Shown: one piece after another, positions 1,960 to 64,000 of the stretch | Numbering within the stretch: the stretch's first letter is position 1 | Layout of the letters: each line of letters starts with the position of its first letter | NCBI GenBank assembly: GCA_946965045.2 | Contig: OX337229.1 | Span: 2,418,001 to 2,482,000, forward strand | DNA: 64,000 nucleotides | Direction: 5' to 3' | DNA from: Epithemia pelagica | Taxonomy: Eukaryota > Protista > Bacillariophyta | Program-made: the position numbers and the translations under genes | Notes under the pieces: generated by a model | Database searches by the model: none | What the model was told of the DNA's origin: nothing | The model's input: only the letters and a program-made list of their open reading frames with translations

Positions 1960-4900
1960 GTACCTCAACCAAACCAATCAGACGCTGTCCAGTCCCCCAC
2001 TGCGACTGGAAGCCCACTCCCAACCCCAACCAAAAAAACACTCAAAAAGACACCGTACTCCAACTAAAACAACACCTGATACACTCACACAACGACACAC
2101 CCATCACAGAACACATGGACGAAGACTTCTGCCAACGACACGGCATGCATGTGTGCTTGCAGTGCAACAAGCCAAGCACTATCTACACGTCGCAAGGACA
2201 CCTCAAGAATCACCAAGACAATAAACATACTAGGACAATCACCAACTTACAACTAGTTCTCAACACGTACAGACACGCCGATGACAACACCAAGGCCAAC
2301 TGGAAAACATCCATCGAGTTCCTCCACGGGCTCAACATCACCCCACCGCCCATCCGGAGAACAATGTGGCACAAACTTAAACAGCCTTCGAGAAAAGAAT
2401 ACTTCGTCGCCTACAACAACATCGTCAACTGGATTTTGGACGCCACCCCGCCACTCCGGGAAGACGAAAAAAGAGACACAAGACCACACCCAGGACAAAC
2501 CGACGCCACCCCTTTTTGGAAGTTGATATTGCTTCTCGAGCCACTCCTGCTCGCACCCACGTCCACCACCGGCCACAAGAGACCATCAGACGCACTGAGG
2601 GCGCGCCACCAGATGATCAAAGAAGGAAAGATCCGGGAACTTTTCGACACCATCTGGAACTCCAATCAAGACTCCACCCAAAACAGCTACCAAACAACAA
2701 CAACCAACAACAACAACAACCAAACAACGATCAGCGACAACTTCCAGACACCAACCCCGATCCCACAAGGTAGAGTGGCAGCGGCACAACGAGCAGCGGA
2801 CGTGGGCAACTATTCCACCGCTTTCAACCGCCTCACCACCAACATGCCGACAGCAACACTGACTCCACAGAGAATCGAAAAAATCCGTAAAGACCTCTTC
2901 CCCCCGAGACGAGACCCTCCACCCGCGACTAGGCACCACGGCCACCTCCACCATCCCCCACCCCCGCGCCAGTTCCTGCAAATCGACAGCGGGCAGTTCG
3001 AGCTGGCCCTCAGACAAATGAAGACGGGAACAGCCTCCGGCCCTTTCGCGTCCTGCACCGATGCAATTGTCTCCATGGCCTTACACCGAACAACACGTGC
3101 GCCCAATTCCACCAGGCCGTACTTCCACAATCTCCAACAACTCCTCCAACTCTTGGTCACGGCACAGCTCCCCCCGGCCGTCCACTCCATCCTCGGTAGC
3201 AACTATTTTCTGGCCCTTCACAAGGACCCAAACAATCTGGAACGCCTCAGACCCATCGGAATCGGGACGGCACTACGACGACTCACTGCCAAAGTTGCTC
3301 TCGTCCACGTCTCCGAAACTGTTCGCCCACTGCTAGTCGCTGGCGGACAATACGGCATACAAGTTCAAGGCGGAATTGACTTTGTCGCCCACACAACGAC
3401 GGCCGCAGTCCACAAGTACATCGTGGAACCGCAAACACCAACGCGAGCGCTCCTCCTCTTGGACCTCCACAATATGTTCAACAACACCTCTCGGACGGAG
3501 GCACGAAAGATCCTCCTCAGCCACGATGCCACCGCACCCCTCATCCCTCTCTTCGACATGTTGACACAAGCCGCAACCCCTTCGTGGTACTTCAACGAAA
3601 ACCACTCCTCCGACAAACTAATGCAAACAGAAGGCTTCCCCCAGGGCTGCCCCCTCAGCCCCCTCTTCTCCTGTCTGGTCCTGGAAGCCCTTACCACCAA
3701 AATCAACAACGAACAAAGACTCCGCGCGGCAGCAAGACTCAGGTCGGGCAACACACATGACGACGGCAAGGGAGGCCAGGCCCACACGGCCTCCATCATG
3801 GACGATACGTCCATTTGCCTCCCCCACGAAGACCTCCCCTGGTTCCTCCAACGATTCGAAGAACTCGGGCGGCCTTTGGGGGTGGACCTCAATAAACAAA
3901 AAACACTCATCCTTACCACAACAACGGGTATCTCCCCAACCAACTCCCTCCCCATTGAAAACAAACAATGCCTGAGACAAGCCCTCACCATGTTAGATCC
4001 ACAACACCCGGACCACCGAGAAATCACCGGCGGGACGCGTTTCTTAGGACAACCAATCGGGTCCCAGGACTTCGCACGCCAGTTCATCACTCTTAGACTC
4101 AAAACCATGGCGGCCAAGATGGAACTCCTTGCGCACCTTCCTGACCTCCAGACTCGCAGCCACCTCTTCCGCTACTCGGTGGTGCCCTCCATTCTGCATC
4201 TCCTTCCCGCCGACCTCGTCATCGCCCACCCGGCTCCACAAGCCACCACCACCAACTGGGACAGCCCCACGACCAAGACAACACAACTCCTCGTCACCAA
4301 ATTTCTGGCCATGCTCACGGCCCTTCCAACGACCGACATCACTGCAACTGCCATCTTAATCGCCACACTGCCAAACCGATTGGGCGGGCTGGGCTATAAC
4401 AGTGCCTCGGCCGCCGCGAGACCGTCTCTCATCACCCAGACAGCCCGAACCATCAAAATCGCTGCCTCCACGGAAACACCAGTCCCTGCCCCCCACAAAC
4501 TGTTCTGGTCCGACTGGGAACACAGCGAACTCCCCTGGATTGTCGCATACCGCCGTTCCCTGGCCCTGTTCGCCAATGAATTCGCCCCCGACGCCATCAG
4601 CAATCCAACACGATTTGACCACACCACCCATAGACACCTCCTCCACCACACCTTCGTGGAGCACACCGTCCCGGCCTTGATCGAGGCCACACCAGCTGAC
4701 ATGCGCCCGTCTCTTCCTTCGGCCCTGTCCCCTCTCACGAGCCTGGCGTTGCACCTCCCCAGAACTGCCGAAGCCTTCCGCCTCGACAACGCCACTTTCG
4801 CTACCGCTATCAAGCGCAAACTCCGCCTCCCAGTCTTGCCCGCCTCCTTCCGCCGCCGACGTTGCCATTGCCCTGCCTCGCCGATGTTGGATCCCGAAGG

Positions 4901-5816
4901 CGACCATTTCTTTTCATGCACAGCAGCCAACAAAACCGCCCTCTCCAACACCATCCGAGACGTTGTTTTTGATGTGCTGCAACATGTGGCCCCCCAAGCA
5001 GGCCTCGTCGACGACCACCGGGACGTCCACATCGAACCCCCAGGTCTCGCGCCCCAACATTCACGCAACATCAGACCCGCCGACGTTGGTTTATTGTTGC
5101 GTCAACCCCACAAGAACGAGCCGTTCCACTACGTAGCTCTAGATGTCACCATCCCCCCTCCTCCGACAAGAACGCCAATTCCCGACCCGGCCGACCATAC
5201 CGCCCTTGCCTCTGCTGCTTCGAGGCCGCATCAGGAATCCGCGCGCTCCAAGTTCTGCAGAGACGATGACACTGCCGTGCACCTCCTCCGCAACGGCATC
5301 TACCTTCTCCCGTTCACCATCGATCATTTGGGCTCCCTGGGATCATTTGCACACTCTTTCTTGTTCCACCAGGATGACCTCCCGCATCCATTCTCATCAG
5401 CGGTCCCTCCCGTCTGGAACGATGGCCACTTTGGACGCCATCCATCACGATCCAAAACACATCCTGCCTCTTTCGCTCTCTACGAAAACCTCAAAGACCT
5501 CCCACGCAATCTTGCCGCAAAAGCCACAGCCAGAACCCCGGGCTTCTCTTTCCCAGAGGCATTTATCAACTCACTCGGACATTTTGCAAAAGCTTCGCTC
5601 TCTCATGCGATCGTCTCCTCCTTGGCAACACACTTGAACAAACAAATCGCGACATTACGTGCAACAGAATATAACAGCCGAATCCAAAAAACTCAGCGTG
5701 CCCGATTGGAACGAATGGGTTTCGCCCCACAACAAAACCTATACACTCCCTTCACGTTAGCACAATTCTTCCCTTCTCACCACCAACCCCACCTGCTCTG
5801 CGGTACGGCCGCTTAG
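1956..5816 (+). CDS. Retrotransposon ORF2: two C2H2 zinc fingers, reverse transcriptase, CCHC knuckle and PD-(D/E)xK restriction-like endonuclease (1286 aa)
   Basis: Zinc fingers CPVPHC..HLIHSH and CLQC..HQDNKH. RT motifs LRPIGIGTALRRL, QYGI, LLLDLHNMFN, GFPQGCPLSP, SIMDD and FLGQPIG. Knuckle CHC..H..C. Nuclease motifs RPADV..LDVTI..SKF. Uninterrupted ORF. Confidence 0.93.
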   Translation: MSTSTKPIRRCPVPHCDWKPTPNPNQKNTQKDTVLQLKQHLIHSHNDTPITEHMDEDFCQRHGMHVCLQCNKPSTIYTSQGHLKNHQDNKHTRTITNLQLVLNTYRHADDNTKANWKTSIEFLHGLNITPPPIRRTMWHKLKQPSRKEYFVAYNNIVNWILDATPPLREDEKRDTRPHPGQTDATPFWKLILLLEPLLLAPTSTTGHKRPSDALRARHQMIKEGKIRELFDTIWNSNQDSTQNSYQTTTTNNNNNQTTISDNFQTPTPIPQGRVAAAQRAADVGNYSTAFNRLTTNMPTATLTPQRIEKIRKDLFPPRRDPPPATRHHGHLHHPPPPRQFLQIDSGQFELALRQMKTGTASGPFASCTDAIVSMALHRTTRAPNSTRPYFHNLQQLLQLLVTAQLPPAVHSILGSNYFLALHKDPNNLERLRPIGIGTALRRLTAKVALVHVSETVRPLLVAGGQYGIQVQGGIDFVAHTTTAAVHKYIVEPQTPTRALLLLDLHNMFNNTSRTEARKILLSHDATAPLIPLFDMLTQAATPSWYFNENHSSDKLMQTEGFPQGCPLSPLFSCLVLEALTTKINNEQRLRAAARLRSGNTHDDGKGGQAHTASIMDDTSICLPHEDLPWFLQRFEELGRPLGVDLNKQKTLILTTTTGISPTNSLPIENKQCLRQALTMLDPQHPDHREITGGTRFLGQPIGSQDFARQFITLRLKTMAAKMELLAHLPDLQTRSHLFRYSVVPSILHLLPADLVIAHPAPQATTTNWDSPTTKTTQLLVTKFLAMLTALPTTDITATAILIATLPNRLGGLGYNSASAAARPSLITQTARTIKIAASTETPVPAPHKLFWSDWEHSELPWIVAYRRSLALFANEFAPDAISNPTRFDHTTHRHLLHHTFVEHTVPALIEATPADMRPSLPSALSPLTSLALHLPRTAEAFRLDNATFATAIKRKLRLPVLPASFRRRRCHCPASPMLDPEGDHFFSCTAANKTALSNTIRDVVFDVLQHVAPQAGLVDDHRDVHIEPPGLAPQHSRNIRPADVGLLLRQPHKNEPFHYVALDVTIPPPPTRTPIPDPADHTALASAASRPHQESARSKFCRDDDTAVHLLRNGIYLLPFTIDHLGSLGSFAHSFLFHQDDLPHPFSSAVPPVWNDGHFGRHPSRSKTHPASFALYENLKDLPRNLAAKATARTPGFSFPEAFINSLGHFAKASLSHAIVSSLATHLNKQIATLRATEYNSRIQKTQRARLERMGFAPQQNLYTPFTLAQFFPSHHQPHLLCGTAA

Positions 5817-56549: not shown

Positions 56550-57029
56550 CGGCGCCAGGATAGGAAAGCATCTAAGTCGCATTTCGATCGCTTTCAGAAA
56601 TTGCGTCGCACCTCAGTCACCACGCGCCCAGACCCACATGCCAATCTCGCGCAACGCCACCACCTCATCCTCCCGGAACTCCATCGATGGGCATGATGGC
56701 GGTATAAAAGAACGCTCTTCAGCAGCATGTTTCTCAGACTTGTACGGTGAAGCAGCTCTCCACAAACGGCAGGAGCAGAGACGTGATGGCCTCACTGAGG
56801 AAAACAGAGCGAACCACAATCGATAGTCCATCATTGCCTTGCTGCCGATAGTTTGGAACAGTCCAGAACGTCCTGGGACGACGATACGGCAATCCATCCA
56901 GTCACGGCCATTACCAGCGTGCACCTTGACGACCAAACACCACCTCGATACAAAACGCCACGCGCATTTGGCAGTCACTCACGGACAATGCCACACAGTC
57001 CATTGTCCTTTGGTTGGCGTGATGGCGGC

Positions 57030-58328
57030 ATGGATACGGTCCTGCGGTCCTTGGTATTCCTGGTCCTTGCATCTTGGACGACGGACCAAACCAGGGTGGT
57101 GTCCTCCTTTGCCTGGTTGGGGCCTCGGTCGTTCTCCCATGCCCACCACCCACGCTCGTCGTCACGGATCCTACGACGATTATGGTGTTCCACGACGACC
57201 ACAAGATCGGTTGCGTCGACCGCAGGCCACCACAATGACACGTTGCTGGCACATGCGACACAACAAGAACAAGAACCACAAGCCACCAACACCTTCACGA
57301 CTTCTACCACTACTACTACTACGTCGTCGTCGTCGTCGTCCCAATGGATGAATGGTGGAGACTCGGCCTCTCGCGACCACCACCATCGACCGATTCGAGA
57401 CATGATTCATCAACGACCGGAACATTTGGGTATGCGACGACAAATGCTCCCTGCTTTGGAATTATTGGAATGCGTACGGCGACAAGGTCCAGCCGTGGAT
57501 GGAACCAAGACCCATGTCGATACTAATACATCCTCCATCGAAGAACCACAGGGAACTGCCACCTTGGGAGATATCATGAACCATGGATTGGTCACACACC
57601 ACACTCTGAAAACAGCAGCATCACCATTGACCAGCACTACCGGACCCTCCCACTCCCCACTGTCGTCGTCGTCGTCATCGTCGTCATTACGGTCGTCCCC
57701 ACAACCACAATCCTTGGCGCAACACTATGGATTTGACAATCCCTTGGATCGCATGGTATTGACTGCCAATGGCAATTTGCAACGACTCATTTCCAGTTAT
57801 TACGATTCGACCGTTTCCGTCCATGTCCATCATTGTACCCCACGACGACAAGCACCAGCACACGTCGCATCCCCCACGCATCCTCCTACACCATCCTCGT
57901 CCATGCACAGTCCAGTCGTCACGTGGGATCGTGTCGTTCATTTACAGGTATGGGATCAAACCTTTTGTACCGCCACATCAGTCATTACCGTACGAGATCC
58001 CTTGTGTGTGACCTTGGTCGAATCGGGACAAGTCGGATTGGGACAACTCTTTCGATACTTGGATTTGCTCCCCGAATTTGAACTGGTCCATGCCGGACAC
58101 TACTACGACACGGAACCAGACAACACGAACAAGAACAACAACCACAACACACGTACTGGTGCCGGCAATAACAATAACAACAACCACAAGGCTCCTCCTC
58201 CAACACCACACGGTGGCGGCGGTGGATTTTGGAGAGAGTACAGATTGGAATGTCCAGAACTCTCCTGTCGAATTCGCGAAGACTTTGTTCCAGGATTATG
58301 GACCTTGCAAAAACCATCCAAGTCCTAG
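57030..58328 (+). CDS. Chorismate-lyase/UTRA-fold-like (DUF98-like) protein with bipartite plastid presequence
   Basis: RMVLTANGNLQRLISSYY, WDRVVHL..CTATSVI, GLGQLFR and FWREYRL..IREDF. Presequence ..VVSS-FAW from ATG 57030. The fold call is tentative. Confidence 0.62.
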   Translation: MDTVLRSLVFLVLASWTTDQTRVVSSFAWLGPRSFSHAHHPRSSSRILRRLWCSTTTTRSVASTAGHHNDTLLAHATQQEQEPQATNTFTTSTTTTTTSSSSSSQWMNGGDSASRDHHHRPIRDMIHQRPEHLGMRRQMLPALELLECVRRQGPAVDGTKTHVDTNTSSIEEPQGTATLGDIMNHGLVTHHTLKTAASPLTSTTGPSHSPLSSSSSSSSLRSSPQPQSLAQHYGFDNPLDRMVLTANGNLQRLISSYYDSTVSVHVHHCTPRRQAPAHVASPTHPPTPSSSMHSPVVTWDRVVHLQVWDQTFCTATSVITVRDPLCVTLVESGQVGLGQLFRYLDLLPEFELVHAGHYYDTEPDNTNKNNNHNTRTGAGNNNNNNHKAPPPTPHGGGGGFWREYRLECPELSCRIREDFVPGLWTLQKPSKS

Positions 58329-58422
58329 TAGCCTAGTGCGCTTCCAATGGTGGCCAACGAAGCAATGTACAAAGAATTGTAACCTTAATTGCTATACCGC
58401 GTACGGTCGGTCGTCCCCCGGT

Positions 58423-61400
58423 TTAATTCTTTCTTCTTCCCCCTCGACTGGCGAGCTGTAGTTGGTTTTTCCTTCTCCGGTTCACACCTCCACCATTGTT
58501 GTTGGTGGTAGAATGGCTTCGTTGCTTTTGGTCAATTGCCTCCCTGGCCCATTGGGCCTTTTCTTGAACCATGGTCTTTTCGGAACGCGCGGCCTCGTCA
58601 ATTAATTTGTCGGCAAATTCCGACTCCAACTCCTTTCGTACGTCCCGGACGTCACCCAACTCTCGGGCAATATCCCCCAACAAGGCAACCGCTTTGTGGA
58701 GCACTGCATCATCCTTGGTGCGGTCCGTGGCCAAGGAACTGAGAAACACGAGAACGTGCGGTGCGTGCGGAACAAAGGCCTGCACGGACTGACCTTCGGC
58801 CAGTCCCACAAGAATACCCGAGTAGGCTTCCAAGACGGAGCCTCGCAGCTTGTTCCAAAACTCAAAGACGGAACACCAAAGCTTATTTGTAAACGCAATC
58901 ATATCTTCATTGTTGAGATGGGGTTGCTGCTGAGAAGCTTGCATAAGCGCCATCATGGTTGGCTCCATGTACGGCTGGAACGCAGCACCAATCGAGAGGG
59001 CCATGTCTCCGAAACAGGAGATTGCTGCAGCCTTTACATCGCGGTCTTTTGCTGACCCTTCCCGAATCATGTGGAACAGAGCTTGCATCAGGTCATCTGC
59101 ATATGGTTGGATCAAGGGCCCAAGGCTTCCGCACAAATCGACAACCACGCCGGTGCAGATTGTGCTCAAACTGCCCTCGAAACTGCGCAATCCTGTCAAA
59201 AGCAATGGCATAAAATCATCCAAGTAGGTCTATGAACACAGAGAGTGAACAGGTGAGTATTTTCGAAAGGGAAAGAAGTATATTTTCCAAAGCCATTTGA
59301 TAGGAACGTACCGCAAACTCATCTTCGAGGCGATACACAATACTCCCAATGGCCATAAAGACCTCTTCTTCAGCATTGCGTACACGTAGTCCCTGCAGGA
59401 GCACCTTCATGATATGCTCTGTATGTCTCAGGACAGTGTTCTTTTCCATGCGATTGTACAAAACTTGGGTCAGAGCACCGAGCTGTCCAACCATTTGAGC
59501 TCGGAAGGTGCTCTCCACAGTTTGGAGCTTCAGAGTACCGTCCAGAGCAGTTGTCACGGTTCGGACCAGCATTTCATCCCGCTTCAAAGAACCCTCGTTT
59601 AGCTCAGCAACAGATTCATTGCTTGCCGAACTGAGGTCATTACATGTGGTCAAGAGTAAGCTTCTACTATTCTCGCTCTCTGTCAAAGCCGCGCTCAAAG
59701 AAACGCATGATGCTTGAATTTCTTCAACTTCGGTGTTCAAGGCTTTCTCACGGTTATTGTTGGACGAGAGGATTGCTTTTGCATCACCAAGCTCCTCTCT
59801 CAAAGTTTTGCGTTCCTTTTCTAGGGCACTCATACTGTCACGCAGAACCAGTCGTTCGTAATCTGAAACGTTGAATTCATTCTTCAAGACTTCCCTCTTC
59901 TCGTTGATCAGAACTTCGATCATGCTGTCATCTAAAGGCTCACCGTGATCCTGTGATGCGGTCAGCTTCGATCGAAGACATTCAACTTTCACATTTGGCG
60001 CGTTCCCATCGTCCTTCTCGGTTTGTTGAAACGACTCATTCTTTTCTTTAAAATCTCTTTCCAGGTCATCAATAACATGGGTCAATAGATCACGCTCTTT
60101 CGTCATTCGTCTCAGTTTATCGAGAGCATCTTCTTTCGCTTTTTCTTCGAGTTCATTCATCACGGTCATCTTCACCAATTCCTCTTTGAGCGATTCATTT
60201 GATGTTTCTGCCTTCTCCAAAGATGCAACCATATCCTCGAGCATTGTGTTGACACTATCGCATGCGACGAGAGCTTCATCTTTCTCCTCCTTCACCACTT
60301 CCAATTGATTTTGCATGGCCTCCAGGCGTGCTTTCATATCCTCGTTTTCCGACATGGCTTCTTTCCTCTCTTCGTTCGCTTGAACAAGTTCATGATCATG
60401 TTTCACACTCATTTTGCCTTGCTCACGAACTGCAGTGTCTAGTGTCTCCTGAAGTATCTCGATTTCTTCCGTTTTCTCTTCAATAGCCTTCAAATGAAGA
60501 ATTTTCATGTGCTCAATTTCCTCGCATTGTTGCTGTTGCTCACACCGACACTCTTCCAGCTTTTCTTTCTGCTCGTTCATTTCATCTTCCATGCGCTGCG
60601 TGGTCAATTTCATAGAATCCACTATCTCGAGTATCTGATCCTTTTCATTGCGAACAGAACTGAGATCCGATTCAAGACGTTCGATTTCTTTGTCTTTGAT
60701 TAGCAAGAGATCAGCCGACTTTTTGAAACGGTCTTCAGATTCTTGTTCAAGTTGATTGCTGGCAGTCGTCTTAGTTGTGAGGTCATCCTTTAGTTTTTGA
60801 ATCTCTTCGTCTTTTTGTTTTGCTATTTCTGATACTTCACTCTTGGCATTCTCAAGTTCCTCTTGCAGCCGCCGAATCTCTTCATCCCTACACTTTTCGA
60901 TTTCCGATATGTGATCCTTCGCCCTTTCGAGCTCCTGTTTCAACTCGCTGATCTCTTCATCCTTCAGCTTTGTCGCTTCAAATGTGGTTGTCTTGTTCTG
61001 TTCAAGCTCATCCTGAAGCTGTTGAGGCTGGTGTTCTTTATCTTCCACTGTCTCCGAAGACACACTCTGGACTGGAAGGATTTCATCTTCCGCATCTTGC
61101 GGCGCTTTGCTGTCGAGCTTCTGTTCTGATAGTAATTGAGATAGTCGTTCGTTCTCGTTCTTCACTGTTTCGAGTTCTTTTTGAAGTATCTCCAATCTGA
61201 GGTCATTTTCCTGTCGCTTTTCGTTCCTCTGTGGTGTTTGTGCACGGCGTGTCGGTGTTGTTACGGTTTTGTGTTTGGATTTCTCGAACTGCTCTTTGAC
61301 GGATGCAAGTTGCCCTTGCAGTTTCTTGAACTCTTCATCTCTCTTTCTTCCTGTTACGGGTGACGGCCTAGATGTCTGGTTGAGCCTGTCTTTCATTCGC

Positions 61401-64000
61401 TTGTTCTCACCAGATATCGTTTGAAGCTTTTGTTTGGTTGACTCGAGTTCCTTTCGCATATGGTCCCGTGCCCCTTCTGCAGCTTTCAGATCTCTTTTCT
61501 TCCGTTGCAGGTCCTCTTCATTTTTGCGAATGGTGTCCTTTTGAGTTTTGTTTGCCTCTTGAAGAGTTTTGAGTTTAGATCTTACTTTCCCCATATCTGC
61601 ATCTTTCTCCCGAAGTCGTCGTATCTCAATGTCCTGTTGTTTTATTACCTCACCTTGAGACTTACGGGTTTCTTCCAGAGTTTTAAGTTCTCCTCGAAAC
61701 TTCGATATTTTAGCTTCTTTGTCTGCTAGCTTTATTATTTCGTCGTCCCTCTCCAATATGGTTTCTTCGAGTGATTTGTTCTCTCTCTGGAGACCCTTAA
61801 GTTCTTGACAAACCGCGTCGTGTTGGCTATGAAGAGAATTTATTTTGCTTGTTTTGTATGAGAGAGCATCTCGAAGAAGTGGGAAATCGAGAACAGGAAC
61901 AAACAAATTATCTGTCTTGGCTCTCTTCCGACCCGGTGTGAGTGTTTCGGGTGTCTGCTTCGGAAGATTGTCGAGCTCGGATGTATTAATGGGTTTGAGT
62001 TTTGAACTTTCGGAGAACCTTCGTTTGGCTCGTCTCTTTTTATGAGTTTCTCTTTTGAAAGACAGAATTCCACTGTTGATCAGAAAAGCATGAACCCTGT
62101 GAAGTTTCCCGAGTTTCCCTTCCGTCGCTCGCGCCAAAGAATCTGCCCAGGCTGCTCGTCGTTCTAGTACCTCTCGATGACCGGCTTTACGGCGAGCTTC
62201 AACAAGTTCCTTTTGAAGCCGACGAATCATTGACCTATCATCCAGAACTTCGTTGACAATTGGATTTGTGGTGACAAGCTTTGCCCGTGCAGCAAATGCC
62301 AACGTCGACCTTGTCTCCTCTAGGTACAGTTCCGACGGTGTTGCGCAACAGATAACTGCCATTCTAGCGTTTCCTGACAAGGATGGCTGAAGTATCCTGG
62401 TAAGCTTGGAATCCCGAAAATTGATATGGGTCCGAGTTGAGGATCCTAGGGCAACAATAACTCGAGATAGAGTCAAGAGACTAGAATTTGATGAGAGACG
62501 AGCCCATTCGCTATCATCTACCGGACAATCATAGCTTACCTTTGGTTTATCATACCTCCTTCTTTCTGACGGTCCCCACTCGCTCCAGTGTGTCGAACAC
62601 TCTCTGATCCAGCCAAGTCAACCAGATCCAAAGTTGACACAAGAATAGGACCGGAATTTTTCCCTTGGGCACTCCGCGGAGAGGCGACACTGTCATTGCC
62701 ATTTTTGACTGGTTCCTTTGCCCTACTTTCAACGGTGATGCGGAAAACGGTGTGACTTCGAGACGAACGTTCATTCATTGAAGTTGCAGCAATCGAGCGT
62801 TTCTTGTTCCCATGGTGAAGAACCCGTTGTAGTGCATTGGAGTCAACAACGATTTCCTCACGAGAAGGAACGAAGAACCCACGTTGCGGATCCTCACGAA
62901 CAGCTAGTTTTTCTTCTTTCCCTCTTGCAAGTAGATCTCGAATTTCTTCGTTATAAATTTCAAGAAAGCTCACTCGGACCAAAAAATCTCTGTTCCTTGA
63001 TTTCTCAATGCTCCGAAATATGTCGGATGCGGCCATTTGGAGTATCCCTTCATCCTTTCCACCCATTCCCGACCCCTGCATCGTGTACGTCTTCCCACTA
63101 GATGTTTGACCATAAGTAAATACGACTCCATTCAGTCCTCCTATTACGGAATGGACGATCCCCTTGGCCATTGACGCATAAACATCTTTGGTACCGTTTG
63201 ATTCTGCAAAGGTTCTGTCAAACGTGAAGAACGTTCTTCCTATGATCTTCTCCTTTATGGGCTTGCCCTCTGGTGTTGTTTGAGTCACAGACGAGTACTG
63301 CGGGAACACCTCCCAGACCCGTTTATGTTGTCCCTCGTTGTCATTGAGTGGGCGCATCCGAATAGCAACTAGAACAAAGAATACCAATTTGAGCATTTTG
63401 ATGCAGGATTTTGTCAGTATCAACAAATCTGGCTTACCGCGAATTCCCTCTTCTGTGGACGGTACCGTTGCAGAATCACTCTCCGGTGATTCTACCTGCA
63501 CAACTTCTTTCTTCTTTGTCGTTGGGGTAGCCAGGGTCTCATTTTCTGCAAATCGAATGCAAGATCCTGCTACAGACCGTCCTTTCTTGCCACTTTTGGA
63601 AGCTTGTATGCTAGTGTCAGATGATACTGTGAGATGTTTGCTTGGTGTGGTCTTTGGTGATAATAACGGGATAGCTGAGACTCGATGAGAAGACGAGCAG
63701 GTTTCTTGTAGATTTTCTGAATTGAAGGATGGTACTATGAGAACCAAACTGCAACGATCACCGCGGTATCATAGTTCTACACTTACCTTGGCCTTTCATA
63801 TTCTTCGATTCATCTTCCACTGGCTGGGACACGGTGTCTAGCACCTCGTTCTTTGTACTTTGAATTGTCATTCCTTTATCAGTATCAGGAATTTTCTCCT
63901 TGTTTGGGGATGGCACTGGTTGTTTGTCCGCATTTGCGTTTGCTATCTCAGAACCTGGCTTCGATTGGTTGTTGTGGTCTTGATGATTGCCACATGCGTC
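58423..64000 (-). CDS. Kinesin-7 (CENP-E-like) motor + coiled coil fused to the importin-beta C-terminal HEAT repeats; 5' end outside the window; introns 63717-63786, 63369-63437, 62481-62539 and 59230-59311
   Basis: Spliced motor: GIR|VAIRMRP, TYGQTSSGKT, NERSSRSH, LVDLAGSE and INQ|SLLTL. All four introns are GT-AG and frame-preserving. The tail matches importin-beta-type motifs (see findings). Confidence 0.88.

What the first reader, a model, noticed from the sequence alone, without database searches (positions are those of the whole stretch)
58423..64000. Kinesin-7 motor fused in frame to the C-terminal half of importin-beta
Seen in sequence: one reading frame runs from a CENP-E-type motor (GQTSSGKT P-loop) through about 900 aa of coiled coil, with no stop or intergenic gap. 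At about 59585 it enters QMVGQLGALTQVLY..HIMKVLLQG..EEEVFMAIGSIVYRLEDEFA. A canonical intron (GTACGT at 59311 to CATAG at 59230) then joins in phase to TYLDDFMPLLLTGLRS..VVVDLCGSL..VKAAAISCFGDMALSIGAAF..LRGSVLEAYSGILVGL. Established knowledge (recalled): these segments parallel importin-beta1 HEAT repeats from about 13 to 19 (EDALMAV..GEFLKYMEAF, LVGDLCRAL, FGDIALAIG, LRESCLEAYTGI). The N-terminal RanGTP-binding arch is absent. Inference: a chimeric motor with a karyopherin-derived cargo tail could bind importin-alpha IBB, NLS cargo or FG nucleoporins without Ran release, and so link transport factors to plus-end spindle or kinetochore motility. I know of no described kinesin with this architecture.
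Basis: partly seen in the sequence, partly recalled or inferred. Interest (0 to 1): 0.9.

Follow-up and report, generated by a model that had tools for sequence, protein, structure and literature searches.

The report
Kinesin with an importin-beta-derived tail
A diatom motor protein (a CENP-E-like kinesin) really does end in the last seven repeats of the nuclear-import receptor importin-beta. The same chimera is kept under selection in at least four divergent diatom genomes, so it is a working, undescribed motor-plus-transport-factor architecture.

Summary
On the minus strand a five-exon gene, whose 5' end lies beyond the window, encodes three parts in one frame.
- A kinesin motor (Pfam PF00225).
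- About 780 aa of coiled coil.
- From 59569, importin-beta1 HEAT repeats 13-19 (PF25574 positions 92-384, E 1.7e-45), crossing the 82-nt GT-AG intron at 59311-59230.

It is not a misassembly. DNA contigs span the junction. The same architecture, intron position and convergent downstream neighbour occur in Epithemia clementina (NCBI KAL7569989.1, "hypothetical protein"), and the architecture and intron also in two unnamed assemblies.

The tail is conserved: 60-70% aa identity against 18-46% for the stalk, dN/dS at most about 0.13. It groups with a canonical diatom importin-beta. It keeps that gene's intron, so it arose by partial DNA-level duplication. The kinesin half is a lineage-specific paralog.

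The Ran-binding N-terminal arch is absent. The IBB-contacting tryptophan (human W864), the acidic character and the fold are kept.

Caveats:
- The one RNA-derived assembly splices the three upstream introns but not the last one.
- Kinesin-7 membership is unresolved.
- Ligand binding is inferred only.

No paper describing this architecture was found.

The parts
63787..64000 (-). Coding exon, partial. The gene's 5' part lies beyond the window end.
   Evidence: The frame is open to the window edge. RNA-derived contig X1 record 2 continues 2259 nt past 64000. In the Epithemia ortholog the motor starts at residue 829.
63717..63786 (-). Intron 1 (70 nt)
   Evidence: Skipped in X1 record 2. The acceptor is 18 nt downstream of the one I first guessed. 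Both keep the frame.
63438..63716 (-). Exon 2, part of the N-terminal extension before the motor
63369..63437 (-). Intron 2 (69 nt)
   Evidence: Skipped in X1 record 2
62540..63368 (-). Exon 3: the larger, N-terminal part of the kinesin motor. P-loop 63111-63088, switch I 62766-62752, switch II 62619-62602.
   Evidence: Pfam PF00225 E 8.4e-71, profile positions 1-257. Motif coordinates.
62481..62539 (-). Intron 3 (59 nt), inside the motor domain
   Evidence: Skipped in X1 record 2. The Pfam Kinesin profile continues from 257 to 259 across it.
62237..62480 (-). Start of exon 4: end of the motor and the neck (NPIVNEVLDD at 62266-62237)
   Evidence: Pfam Kinesin profile 259-326. Near-identical to the Epithemia ortholog.
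61913..62044 (-). Two basic NLS-like motifs after the neck (HKKRRAKRR, PGRKRAKT)
   Evidence: The core K-R-R-x-S is invariant also in unfused diatom paralogs.
59570..61912 (-). Coiled-coil stalk (~780 aa), fast-evolving
   Evidence: Sub-threshold Pfam hits to coiled-coil families. 18-46% aa identity between the four genomes.
59312..59569 (-). End of exon 4: start of the importin-beta-derived tail (HEAT 13-14)
   Evidence: BLASTP against canonical importin-beta P0005 residues 552-640: 49% identity, E 2e-22. PF25574 profile 92-185.
59230..59311 (-). Intron 4 (82 nt, GTACGT..CATAG). It is inherited from the importin-beta parent gene.
   Evidence: Same site and phase in L001, L002 and L003 and in a canonical importin-beta gene, L005. 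It is retained in RNA-derived contig X1 record 1. If retained it shifts the frame and gives a stop at 59216.
58423..59229 (-). Exon 5: HEAT 15-19, a C-terminal extension and the stop codon (58425-58423)
   Evidence: PF25574 profile 187-384, E 1.7e-45. Aligns to human importin-beta 646-869. 53% identical to P0005.
58822..58887 (-). 33-nt tandem duplication (NKLWCSVFEFW / NKLRGSVLEAY) that adds 11 aa in HEAT 17
   Evidence: Present in all four fusion tails and absent from canonical importin-beta. This segment has low pLDDT in the model.
58549..58551 (-). Trp codon equivalent to human importin-beta W864, an IBB contact
   Evidence: Alignment. Conserved in all fusion tails and in 90% of canonical sequences. 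Its role is described in PMC12749841.
58426..58521 (-). C-terminal extension beyond the canonical importin-beta end, with the basic motif NRRRKNQ (58482-58462)
   Evidence: The N-x-R-R-K-x-Q motif is shared with Epithemia and L001.

Best explanation
This is a genuine, selectively maintained chimeric gene.

Architecture (shown). A lineage-specific paralog of the diatom CENP-E-like kinesins encodes an internal motor with its neck on the C-terminal side. A neck on that side implies plus-end-directed movement, which is an inference. The motor is followed by a ~780-aa dimerising coiled coil. The tail consists of HEAT repeats 13-19 of the host's own importin-beta1.

Origin (shown). The tail was captured by a partial, DNA-level duplication of the importin-beta gene, because it still carries that gene's intron. 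It later gained an 11-aa insertion in HEAT 17 and a short basic C-terminal extension.

Function (inferred). The tail serves as the motor's docking module.
- It keeps the acidic character and the Trp (human W864) with which importin-beta's C-terminal repeats hold the basic helix of IBB domains.
- It spans the repeats (16-17) that form the one C-terminal FG-nucleoporin pocket.
- It lacks repeats 1-12, where RanGTP binds.

The most likely working model is therefore a dimeric motor that carries or anchors an IBB-type partner (importin-alpha with its NLS cargo, or another basic-helix protein), and/or FG nucleoporins, along microtubules. RanGTP could not release that partner directly.
For: Architecture in the window:
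- Pfam Kinesin plus PF25574, with profile continuity across the introns.
- One frame through all five exons.
- Homology to a canonical diatom importin-beta from residue 552 to the end.

Not an assembly artefact:
- DNA contigs from runs X2 and X3 cover 58050-59211 and 59266-64000. Two allelic 114-nt unitigs bridge the gap between them.
- The same gene order, including the convergent downstream neighbour (49% identity, E 5e-71), occurs in Epithemia clementina.

Conservation:
- E. clementina KAL7569989.1 has Kinesin at 829-1171 and PF25574 at 2018-2326. It aligns colinearly with the window protein across the junction.
- L001 and L002 have the same junction and the same intron.

Selection:
- Tail dN is 0.19-0.26 and dN/dS 0.05-0.13 with dS saturated. 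Stalk dN is 0.45-0.95.
- All three within-species SNPs in the tail are synonymous.

Origin:
- The five fusion tails form one clade (SH-aLRT 100). It is sister to the full-length importin-beta P0005 (99), inside a clade of full-length (canonical-length) importin-betas (97) within a wider set that includes the ochrophyte Tribonema minus.
- A canonical importin-beta gene (L005) has an intron at the identical codon boundary.
- The fusion kinesins form one clade (100). Its sister group contains an unfused Epithemia paralog.

Fold and function hints:
- The AlphaFold model of the orthologous tail has pLDDT 87.5. The 18 best PDB matches are all importin-beta/Kap95, with TM 0.67-0.75. The best is the IBB-bound form 1QGR.
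- The tails keep 67-76% of family-wide conserved positions, against a canonical mean of 82%. The W864 equivalent is among those kept.
- Net charge is -7 to -13, as in canonical tails.
- Literature: IBB domains make most of their hydrogen bonds with HEAT 14-19, FG pocket 5 lies between HEAT 16 and 17, and Ran binds mainly HEAT 1-13 (PMC12749841). HEAT 14-16 bind nucleoporins (PMC2172684).
Against: - In the only RNA-derived assembly of this organism, the contig covering 57711-62112 runs through the last intron unspliced. Translation of the tail is therefore not shown by RNA here.
- No binding experiment or complex model exists.
- The smallest importin-beta fragment shown to bind importin-alpha in the paper read is 304-876, HEAT 8-19. 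The tail has only HEAT 13-19. It lacks W342, W430 and the HEAT 7-13 contacts.
- The shared 11-aa insertion lies in HEAT 17, next to FG pocket 5, and could alter that pocket.
- The stem leading to the fusion clade is long (0.34 in the tail tree and 0.59 in the motor tree). That fits some change of function.
- The E. clementina model is an automated BRAKER2 prediction.
Confidence: 0.75

Rival explanations
1. The tail has taken on a new function. It is a stable HEAT solenoid reused as a lineage-specific cargo-binding or regulatory domain, and its partner has nothing to do with importin-alpha, NLS cargo or nucleoporins.
For: - Long stem branches lead to the fusion clade.
- All fusion tails share an 11-aa insertion in HEAT 17 and a new basic C-terminal extension.
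- HEAT 7-12, which supply part of the IBB site, are lost.
- The gene is confined to a small diatom clade.
Against: - The tail retains 67-76% of positions conserved across canonical importin-betas, including the W864 equivalent.
- Its acidity matches canonical tails.
- The predicted fold superposes best on IBB-bound importin-beta.
Confidence: 0.2
2. The main product in this organism is a truncated kinesin. The last intron is normally retained, translation stops at 59216, and the last exon is untranslated, or is translated only in a minor or conditional isoform.
For: X1 record 1 (4402 nt) covers 57711-62112 without skipping 59311-59230. X1 record 2 does skip all three upstream introns. Retention shifts the frame and gives a stop after 31 codons.
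Against: - The last exon is the best-conserved part of the gene after the motor, with dN/dS at most 0.13 in four genomes.
- In three of the four genomes the intron blocks the frame, so the exon can only be under protein-level selection if it is spliced.
- The GT-AG ends and the position are conserved.
- Contigs drop minority variants and carry no strand. The contig also fuses with the convergent neighbour gene, so it may be partly antisense read-through.
Confidence: 0.1
3. Assembly chimera, or two adjacent genes wrongly read as one.
For: None found. This was the default caution for an unusual architecture seen in a single window.
Against: - Independent DNA contigs from several runs are continuous over the junction at 59569.
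- The identical junction is open in frame in four divergent genomes with saturated dS.
- Synteny with the downstream neighbour is conserved.
Confidence: 0.02

Closest known systems
Importin-beta1 / Kap95 (karyopherin-beta1), C-terminal HEAT repeats 13-19
   Same: - The tail is homologous along its whole length to residues ~552-868 of a canonical diatom importin-beta (49-53% identity).
- It matches PF25574 and has the same predicted fold (TM 0.73-0.75, rmsd 2.5-3.0 A).
- It has the same intron position as a canonical importin-beta gene.
- It keeps the W864 equivalent and the acidic charge.
   Different: - It lacks HEAT 1-12. That means no IBN_N/Ran-binding arch, no main FG sites, no acidic loop, and no W342 or W430.
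- It is not a free receptor but the C-terminus of a motor.
- It has an 11-aa insertion in HEAT 17 and a basic C-terminal extension.
CENP-E-like (kinesin-7-type) kinesins of diatoms and other stramenopiles
   Same: - Motor with its neck on the C-terminal side, followed by a very long coiled coil.
- Nearest named relatives are annotated 'centromeric protein E'.
- The CENP-E motor is a near-best PDB hit.
- The post-neck basic motifs are shared with unfused diatom paralogs.
   Different: - The fusion kinesins form a separate clade on a long stem.
- The motor is preceded by a long N-terminal extension.
- The tail is importin-beta-derived. Among the 120 best related long kinesins, only the Epithemia ortholog has PF25574.
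Plant armadillo-repeat kinesins (ARK1-3), recalled from general knowledge and not tested here
   Same: A kinesin motor and coiled coil joined to a C-terminal alpha-solenoid repeat domain that acts as the partner-binding tail.
   Different: ARM repeats of a different origin, a different kinesin family, and no relation to a nuclear transport receptor.
Importin-alpha/beta regulation of mitotic motors such as Kid and XCTK2 (recalled; general role reviewed in PMC9686011, listed but not read)
   Same: The karyopherin system and mitotic kinesins are functionally linked.
   Different: In those cases importins bind the motors in trans through an NLS and are released by RanGTP. Here part of importin-beta is covalently built into the motor, and the Ran-binding part is missing.

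Membership tests
Kinesin superfamily | Motor domain with P-loop, switch I and switch II | tested here: met
   PF00225 E 8.4e-71 plus 8.4e-20 over the two exons. GQTSSGKT, SSRSH and DLAGSE are present.
Kinesin-7 (CENP-E/CMET/Kip2) | Motor groups phylogenetically with CENP-E rather than with other kinesin families | tested here: inconclusive
   In the PDB sequence search KIF3B (229.5 bits) and CENP-E (227.2 bits) tie. Relatives carry automatic 'centromeric protein E' names. No tree with reference kinesin families could be built.
Kinesin-7 (CENP-E/CMET/Kip2) | Motor at the extreme N-terminus followed by a long coiled coil | tested here: not met
   The coiled coil is present. The motor is internal, though: it starts at residue 829 in the Epithemia ortholog. 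In the window at least 166 coding residues precede it, and the transcript continues a further 2.26 kb upstream.
Kinesin-7 (CENP-E/CMET/Kip2) | C-terminal kinetochore-binding and second microtubule-binding regions | not testable with these tools
   There is no profile for these regions. The C-terminus here is importin-beta-derived.
Importin-beta1 (functional nuclear import receptor) | N-terminal importin-beta domain (IBN_N) and HEAT 1-8 that bind RanGTP | tested here: not met
   No IBN_N or N-terminal HEAT hit in the window pieces or in the full-length ortholog P0002. Canonical P0005 and P0007 do show PF03810.
Importin-beta1 (functional nuclear import receptor) | Complete 19-repeat solenoid, including the main FG sites in HEAT 4-8 | tested here: not met
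   Homology begins at canonical residue ~552 and at PF25574 position 81-92 of 388.
Importin-beta1-derived domain (homology only) | Significant sequence and fold match to the importin-beta1 C-terminal repeats, nested within importin-beta1 in a tree | tested here: met
   PF25574 E 1.7e-45. PDB importin-beta E 6e-26. Foldseek top 18 hits are all importin-beta/Kap95. The fusion clade is sister to canonical P0005 with SH-aLRT 99.
Importin-beta1-derived domain (homology only) | Retention of residues used for IBB binding in HEAT 14-19 (W864; acidic inner surface) | tested here: inconclusive
   The W864 equivalent is conserved in all fusion tails and net charge is -7 to -13. Individual acidic contact residues were not mapped, and binding was not tested.

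The most novel reading that the evidence does not exclude
The chimera directly couples a microtubule motor to the karyopherin system. A dimeric kinesin constitutively holds importin-alpha/NLS cargo, or grips FG nucleoporins of the nuclear envelope, through a Ran-insensitive importin-beta fragment. It would deliver spindle-assembly factors, or move the nucleus or pore-bearing membranes, along microtubules.

The gene has so far been found only in Epithemia and close relatives. Epithemia hosts nitrogen-fixing endosymbionts. A role tied to the unusual cell biology of that lineage cannot be excluded.
Probability: 0.3. Interest if true: 0.8.

Novelty: new variant of a known kind. Interest (0 to 1): 0.65.

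Why it matters
Importins are known to regulate mitotic motors and spindle factors in trans, with RanGTP as the release switch. Here evolution has built the cargo-holding end of importin-beta into a kinesin and discarded the Ran switch, and has kept the product under purifying selection.

If the tail still binds IBB-type helices or FG repeats, three things follow:
- It is a natural experiment on what HEAT 13-19 can do alone.
- It is a new way of loading cargo onto a motor.
- It is a handle on diatom mitosis or nuclear positioning.

It is also a clean, datable example of a new gene. Two paralog duplications and an in-frame exon capture produced it, and the parent gene's intron survives as a footprint.

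Tried and rejected
- **Misassembly.** Rejected. DNA contigs span the junction and synteny is conserved.
- **Other annotated fusions.** A search for long proteins (1313-4179 aa) carrying this tail found only the Epithemia protein. A search with the window's junction region found only the window's own ORF.
- **Metagenome scan.** A scan of JGI metagenome contigs with a junction alignment found none.
- **Intramolecular clasp.** I considered the importin-like tail binding the motor's own basic NLS-like motifs. There is no support from co-occurrence, because the K-R-R-x-S motif is invariant in unfused paralogs too. No IBB domain was found in the ortholog's N-terminal 828 aa.
- **PDB search with the exon-4 tail piece alone.** It gave nothing. 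Homology of that piece needed the Pfam profile and a diatom importin-beta.
- **Kinesin family assignment by PDB search.** It was a tie.
- **Second attempt to list RNA runs for the intron region.** None was listed. The single read-laying run had already been used.
- **FG pocket 5 residues.** The equivalents of human L700, E703 and Q741 are I, G and Q here. By my reading they are the same in the canonical diatom protein. They therefore say nothing about loss or retention.
- **L612 equivalent.** It could not be verified, because no printed alignment to the human chain covered that region.

Full report
**1. What is in the window**

The gene lies on the minus strand and has at least five exons. In window coordinates, 5' to 3' on the minus strand, they are:
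- beyond 64000 to 63787
- 63716 to 63438
- 63368 to 62540
- 62480 to 59312
- 59229 to 58426, with the stop at 58425-58423

Joined, they give one frame of 1765 codons with no stop.

Pfam finds a kinesin motor split by the third intron. Profile positions 1-257 score E 8.4e-71, and positions 259-326 score E 8.4e-20. The P-loop, switch I and switch II are all present.

After the neck come two basic NLS-like motifs and about 780 residues of coiled-coil-type sequence. From 59569 the same exon becomes importin-beta. BLASTP of this piece against a full-length diatom-type importin-beta (P0005, 868 aa) aligns residues 552-640 at 49% identity, E 2e-22.

The last exon aligns to P0005 642-868 at 53% identity and to human importin-beta 646-869 of 876. 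It matches PF25574 at E 1.7e-45. The profile runs to position 185 before the intron and resumes at 187 after it.

The tail corresponds to HEAT repeats 13-19, about the last 37% of importin-beta.

**2. Is it an artefact?**

No. I laid contigs of four public runs on 58050-64000.
- Two long-contig DNA runs (X2, X3) cover 59266-64000 and 58050-59211. Two allelic 114-nt unitigs bridge 59182-59295.
- There is no break at the junction near 59569.
- One small run (X1) is RNA-derived. Its record 2 skips exactly the three upstream introns: 63786-63717, 63437-63369 and 62539-62481. It then continues 2.26 kb beyond the window. The motor exons are therefore transcribed and spliced as modelled.

**3. The same chimera elsewhere**

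An exhaustive profile-free search with the last exon found 1022 relatives. The best hit was a 2388-aa protein whose match lies at its very C-terminus. This is Epithemia clementina KAL7569989.1, annotated "hypothetical protein". A second copy is KAL7579801.1. It has Pfam Kinesin at 829-1171 and PF25574 at 2018-2326.

It aligns colinearly with the window's large exon from the motor, through the stalk, across the junction. At the junction the window reads VESTFRAQMVGQLGALTQVLY and Epithemia reads VENTFKAQMVGQLAALIQVLY.

Two further unnamed assemblies carry the same thing:
- L001, a Logan contig, has one ORF that spans stalk and tail.
- L002, a 4-Mb ENA contig, has a kinesin ORF, a 986-aa ORF and the 254-aa last exon in a row.

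The convergent downstream neighbour gene is also conserved between the window and Epithemia (49% identity, E 5e-71).

**4. The intron as a footprint of origin**

In all four genomes a GT-AG intron of 82, 87, 73 or 84 nt sits at the same codon boundary, after ...(D/E)xF(A/V) and before (T/K/V)Y.... A canonical two-exon importin-beta gene on a metagenome contig (L005, 861 aa when spliced) has a 130-nt intron at exactly the same boundary.

The tail was therefore copied from the importin-beta gene as DNA, not as a retrocopy.

In a tree of 65 C-terminal regions:
- The five fusion tails form one clade (SH-aLRT 100).
- That clade is sister to the full-length P0005 (99).
- Both sit inside a clade of canonical-length importin-betas (97). 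The wider tree includes the ochrophyte Tribonema minus.

In a tree of motor plus neck:
- The fusion kinesins form one clade (100) on a long stem.
- Their sister group contains an unfused Epithemia paralog. Nitzschia, Seminavis, Fistulifera, Mayamaea and the centric diatoms fall in other groups.
- Among the 120 best related long kinesins, only the Epithemia protein carries PF25574.

Both halves are thus lineage-specific duplicates that were joined once. All fusion tails share an 11-aa insertion that looks like a 33-nt tandem duplication (NKLWxSVFxFx / NKLRxSV). They also share a C-terminal extension with an N-x-R-R-K-x-Q motif. Canonical proteins have neither.

**5. Selection**

Synonymous divergence between the four genomes is saturated (dS above 1.4), so they are deeply diverged.

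| Region | aa identity | dN |
|---|---|---|
| Tail | 60-70% | 0.19-0.26 |
| Stalk | 18-46% | 0.45-0.95 |
| End of motor and neck | 76-85% | 0.10-0.15 |

Tail dN/dS is 0.05-0.13, and saturation of dS means the true values are probably lower.

The three SNPs seen between runs in the tail are all synonymous. The stalk and the N-terminal part carry several replacements.

In three of the four genomes the intron would shift or stop the frame if retained. Protein-level selection on the last exon therefore implies that it is spliced in.

**6. The caveat**

In this organism's only RNA-derived assembly, the contig covering the 3' part (X1 record 1, 57711-62112, mean depth 78.6 against 8.2 for the 5' contig) runs through the last intron. 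It continues into the 3' end of the convergent neighbour.

Contigs have no strand, drop minority paths and can merge overlapping convergent transcripts. Three readings are possible:
- real intron retention
- antisense read-through from the neighbour
- an assembly effect

I could not resolve this. The E. clementina model that splices this intron is an automated BRAKER2 prediction made with RNA-seq hints.

**7. What the tail could do**

An AlphaFold model of the orthologous tail (P0002 2005-2388, 47-row alignment) is confident: pLDDT 87.5, pTM 0.86. It is all-helical, and the low-confidence stretches are mainly the insertion, the first residues and the C-terminal extension. The 18 best PDB matches are all importin-beta or Kap95 (TM 0.67-0.75, rmsd 2.5-4.7 A over about 337 columns). 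The best is IBB-bound importin-beta 1QGR.

The tails keep 67-76% of the 67 positions that are at least 70% conserved among 40 canonical sequences. The canonical mean is 82%, with a range of 60-99%. The Trp equivalent to human W864 is among the positions kept. The tails are as acidic as canonical tails.

From the literature:
- W342, W430 and W864 make cation-pi contacts with IBB domains (PMC12749841).
- IBB domains make over ten hydrogen bonds with HEAT 14-19 and only two salt bridges with HEAT 7-13 (PMC12749841).
- FG pocket 5 lies between HEAT 16 and 17, and RanGTP binds mainly HEAT 1-13 (PMC12749841).
- A weak second nucleoporin site lies in HEAT 14-16, and fragment 304-876 binds importin-alpha at 2.5 nM (PMC2172684).

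The tail therefore contains the larger share of the IBB-helix site and one FG pocket, but none of the Ran switch. Ran-independent docking of an IBB-type partner and/or FG repeats is the best-supported model. It remains inference. The smallest importin-alpha-binding fragment reported in the paper read is larger than this tail, and the HEAT-17 insertion sits next to pocket 5.

**8. Comparison and novelty**

The protein is a kinesin. It is not a functional importin-beta receptor, because the defining N-terminal Ran-binding part is absent. Its tail is an importin-beta1-derived domain.

Kinesin-7 membership is unresolved. KIF3B and CENP-E tie in the PDB search, and the motor is internal rather than N-terminal.

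Full-text searches found no description of a kinesin with an importin-beta domain. The Epithemia genome paper mentions neither kinesin nor the fusion. A metagenome scan with the junction found nothing.

The genome's size and piece count and the run years would fit the 60-Mb Epithemia pelagica assembly mentioned in PMC12377750. This is only an inference. If it is right, the known distribution is Epithemia plus two unnamed relatives.

**Verdict**

This is a real, conserved, undescribed domain architecture, best classed as a new variant of a known kind. The structure and origin are well supported. Last-intron splicing in this organism and the biochemical function remain open.

Noticed in passing
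window 57711-62112 (run X1 record 1) versus 62093-64000 (record 2): The RNA-derived contigs show a tenfold step in mean depth near 62100 (78.6 against 8.2). The 3' contig merges with the 3' end of the convergent neighbour gene and retains the last intron. Possible causes are 3' bias, overlapping convergent transcripts or antisense read-through.
   Followed up: partly
window 56853-58328 (+): Convergent downstream gene. It has low-complexity Ser/Thr/Asn runs and a conserved C-terminal half (LTANGNLQRLI..., FCTATSVITVRDP, GLGQLFRYL). It is syntenic and 49% identical with the gene downstream of the Epithemia clementina ortholog. Its function was not examined.
   Followed up: partly
window 58822-58887 (-): An ancient 33-nt tandem duplication adds 11 residues in HEAT 17. 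It is shared by all four fusion tails and absent from canonical importin-beta, so it marks the fusion clade. It lies next to the HEAT 16-17 FG pocket.
   Followed up: partly
window 58426-58521 (-): C-terminal extension beyond the normal importin-beta end, with the conserved basic motif N-x-R-R-K-x-Q. It could be an NLS or a microtubule-binding patch.
   Followed up: no
window 61913-62044 (-): Basic NLS-like motifs just after the kinesin neck (HKKRRAKRR, PGRKRAKT). The K-R-R-x-S core is invariant also in unfused CENP-E-like paralogs of Epithemia, Nitzschia and Fistulifera.
   Followed up: partly
window 59182-59295: Heterozygous bubble with two alleles at similar depth in the DNA runs. It has three SNPs: 59212 (synonymous) and 59239 and 59265 (intronic). 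The splice sites are untouched.
   Followed up: yes
window 60394 and 62225 (run X4 loose ends): Contig ends in run X4 carry foreign sequence that ends in GATC. This looks like Hi-C ligation junctions rather than structural variation.
   Followed up: no
L005 (JGI metagenome contig) 2233-4948: A canonical two-exon importin-beta gene whose single intron is at the same codon boundary as the last intron of the fusion gene. An Arf-family GTPase gene lies upstream.
   Followed up: partly
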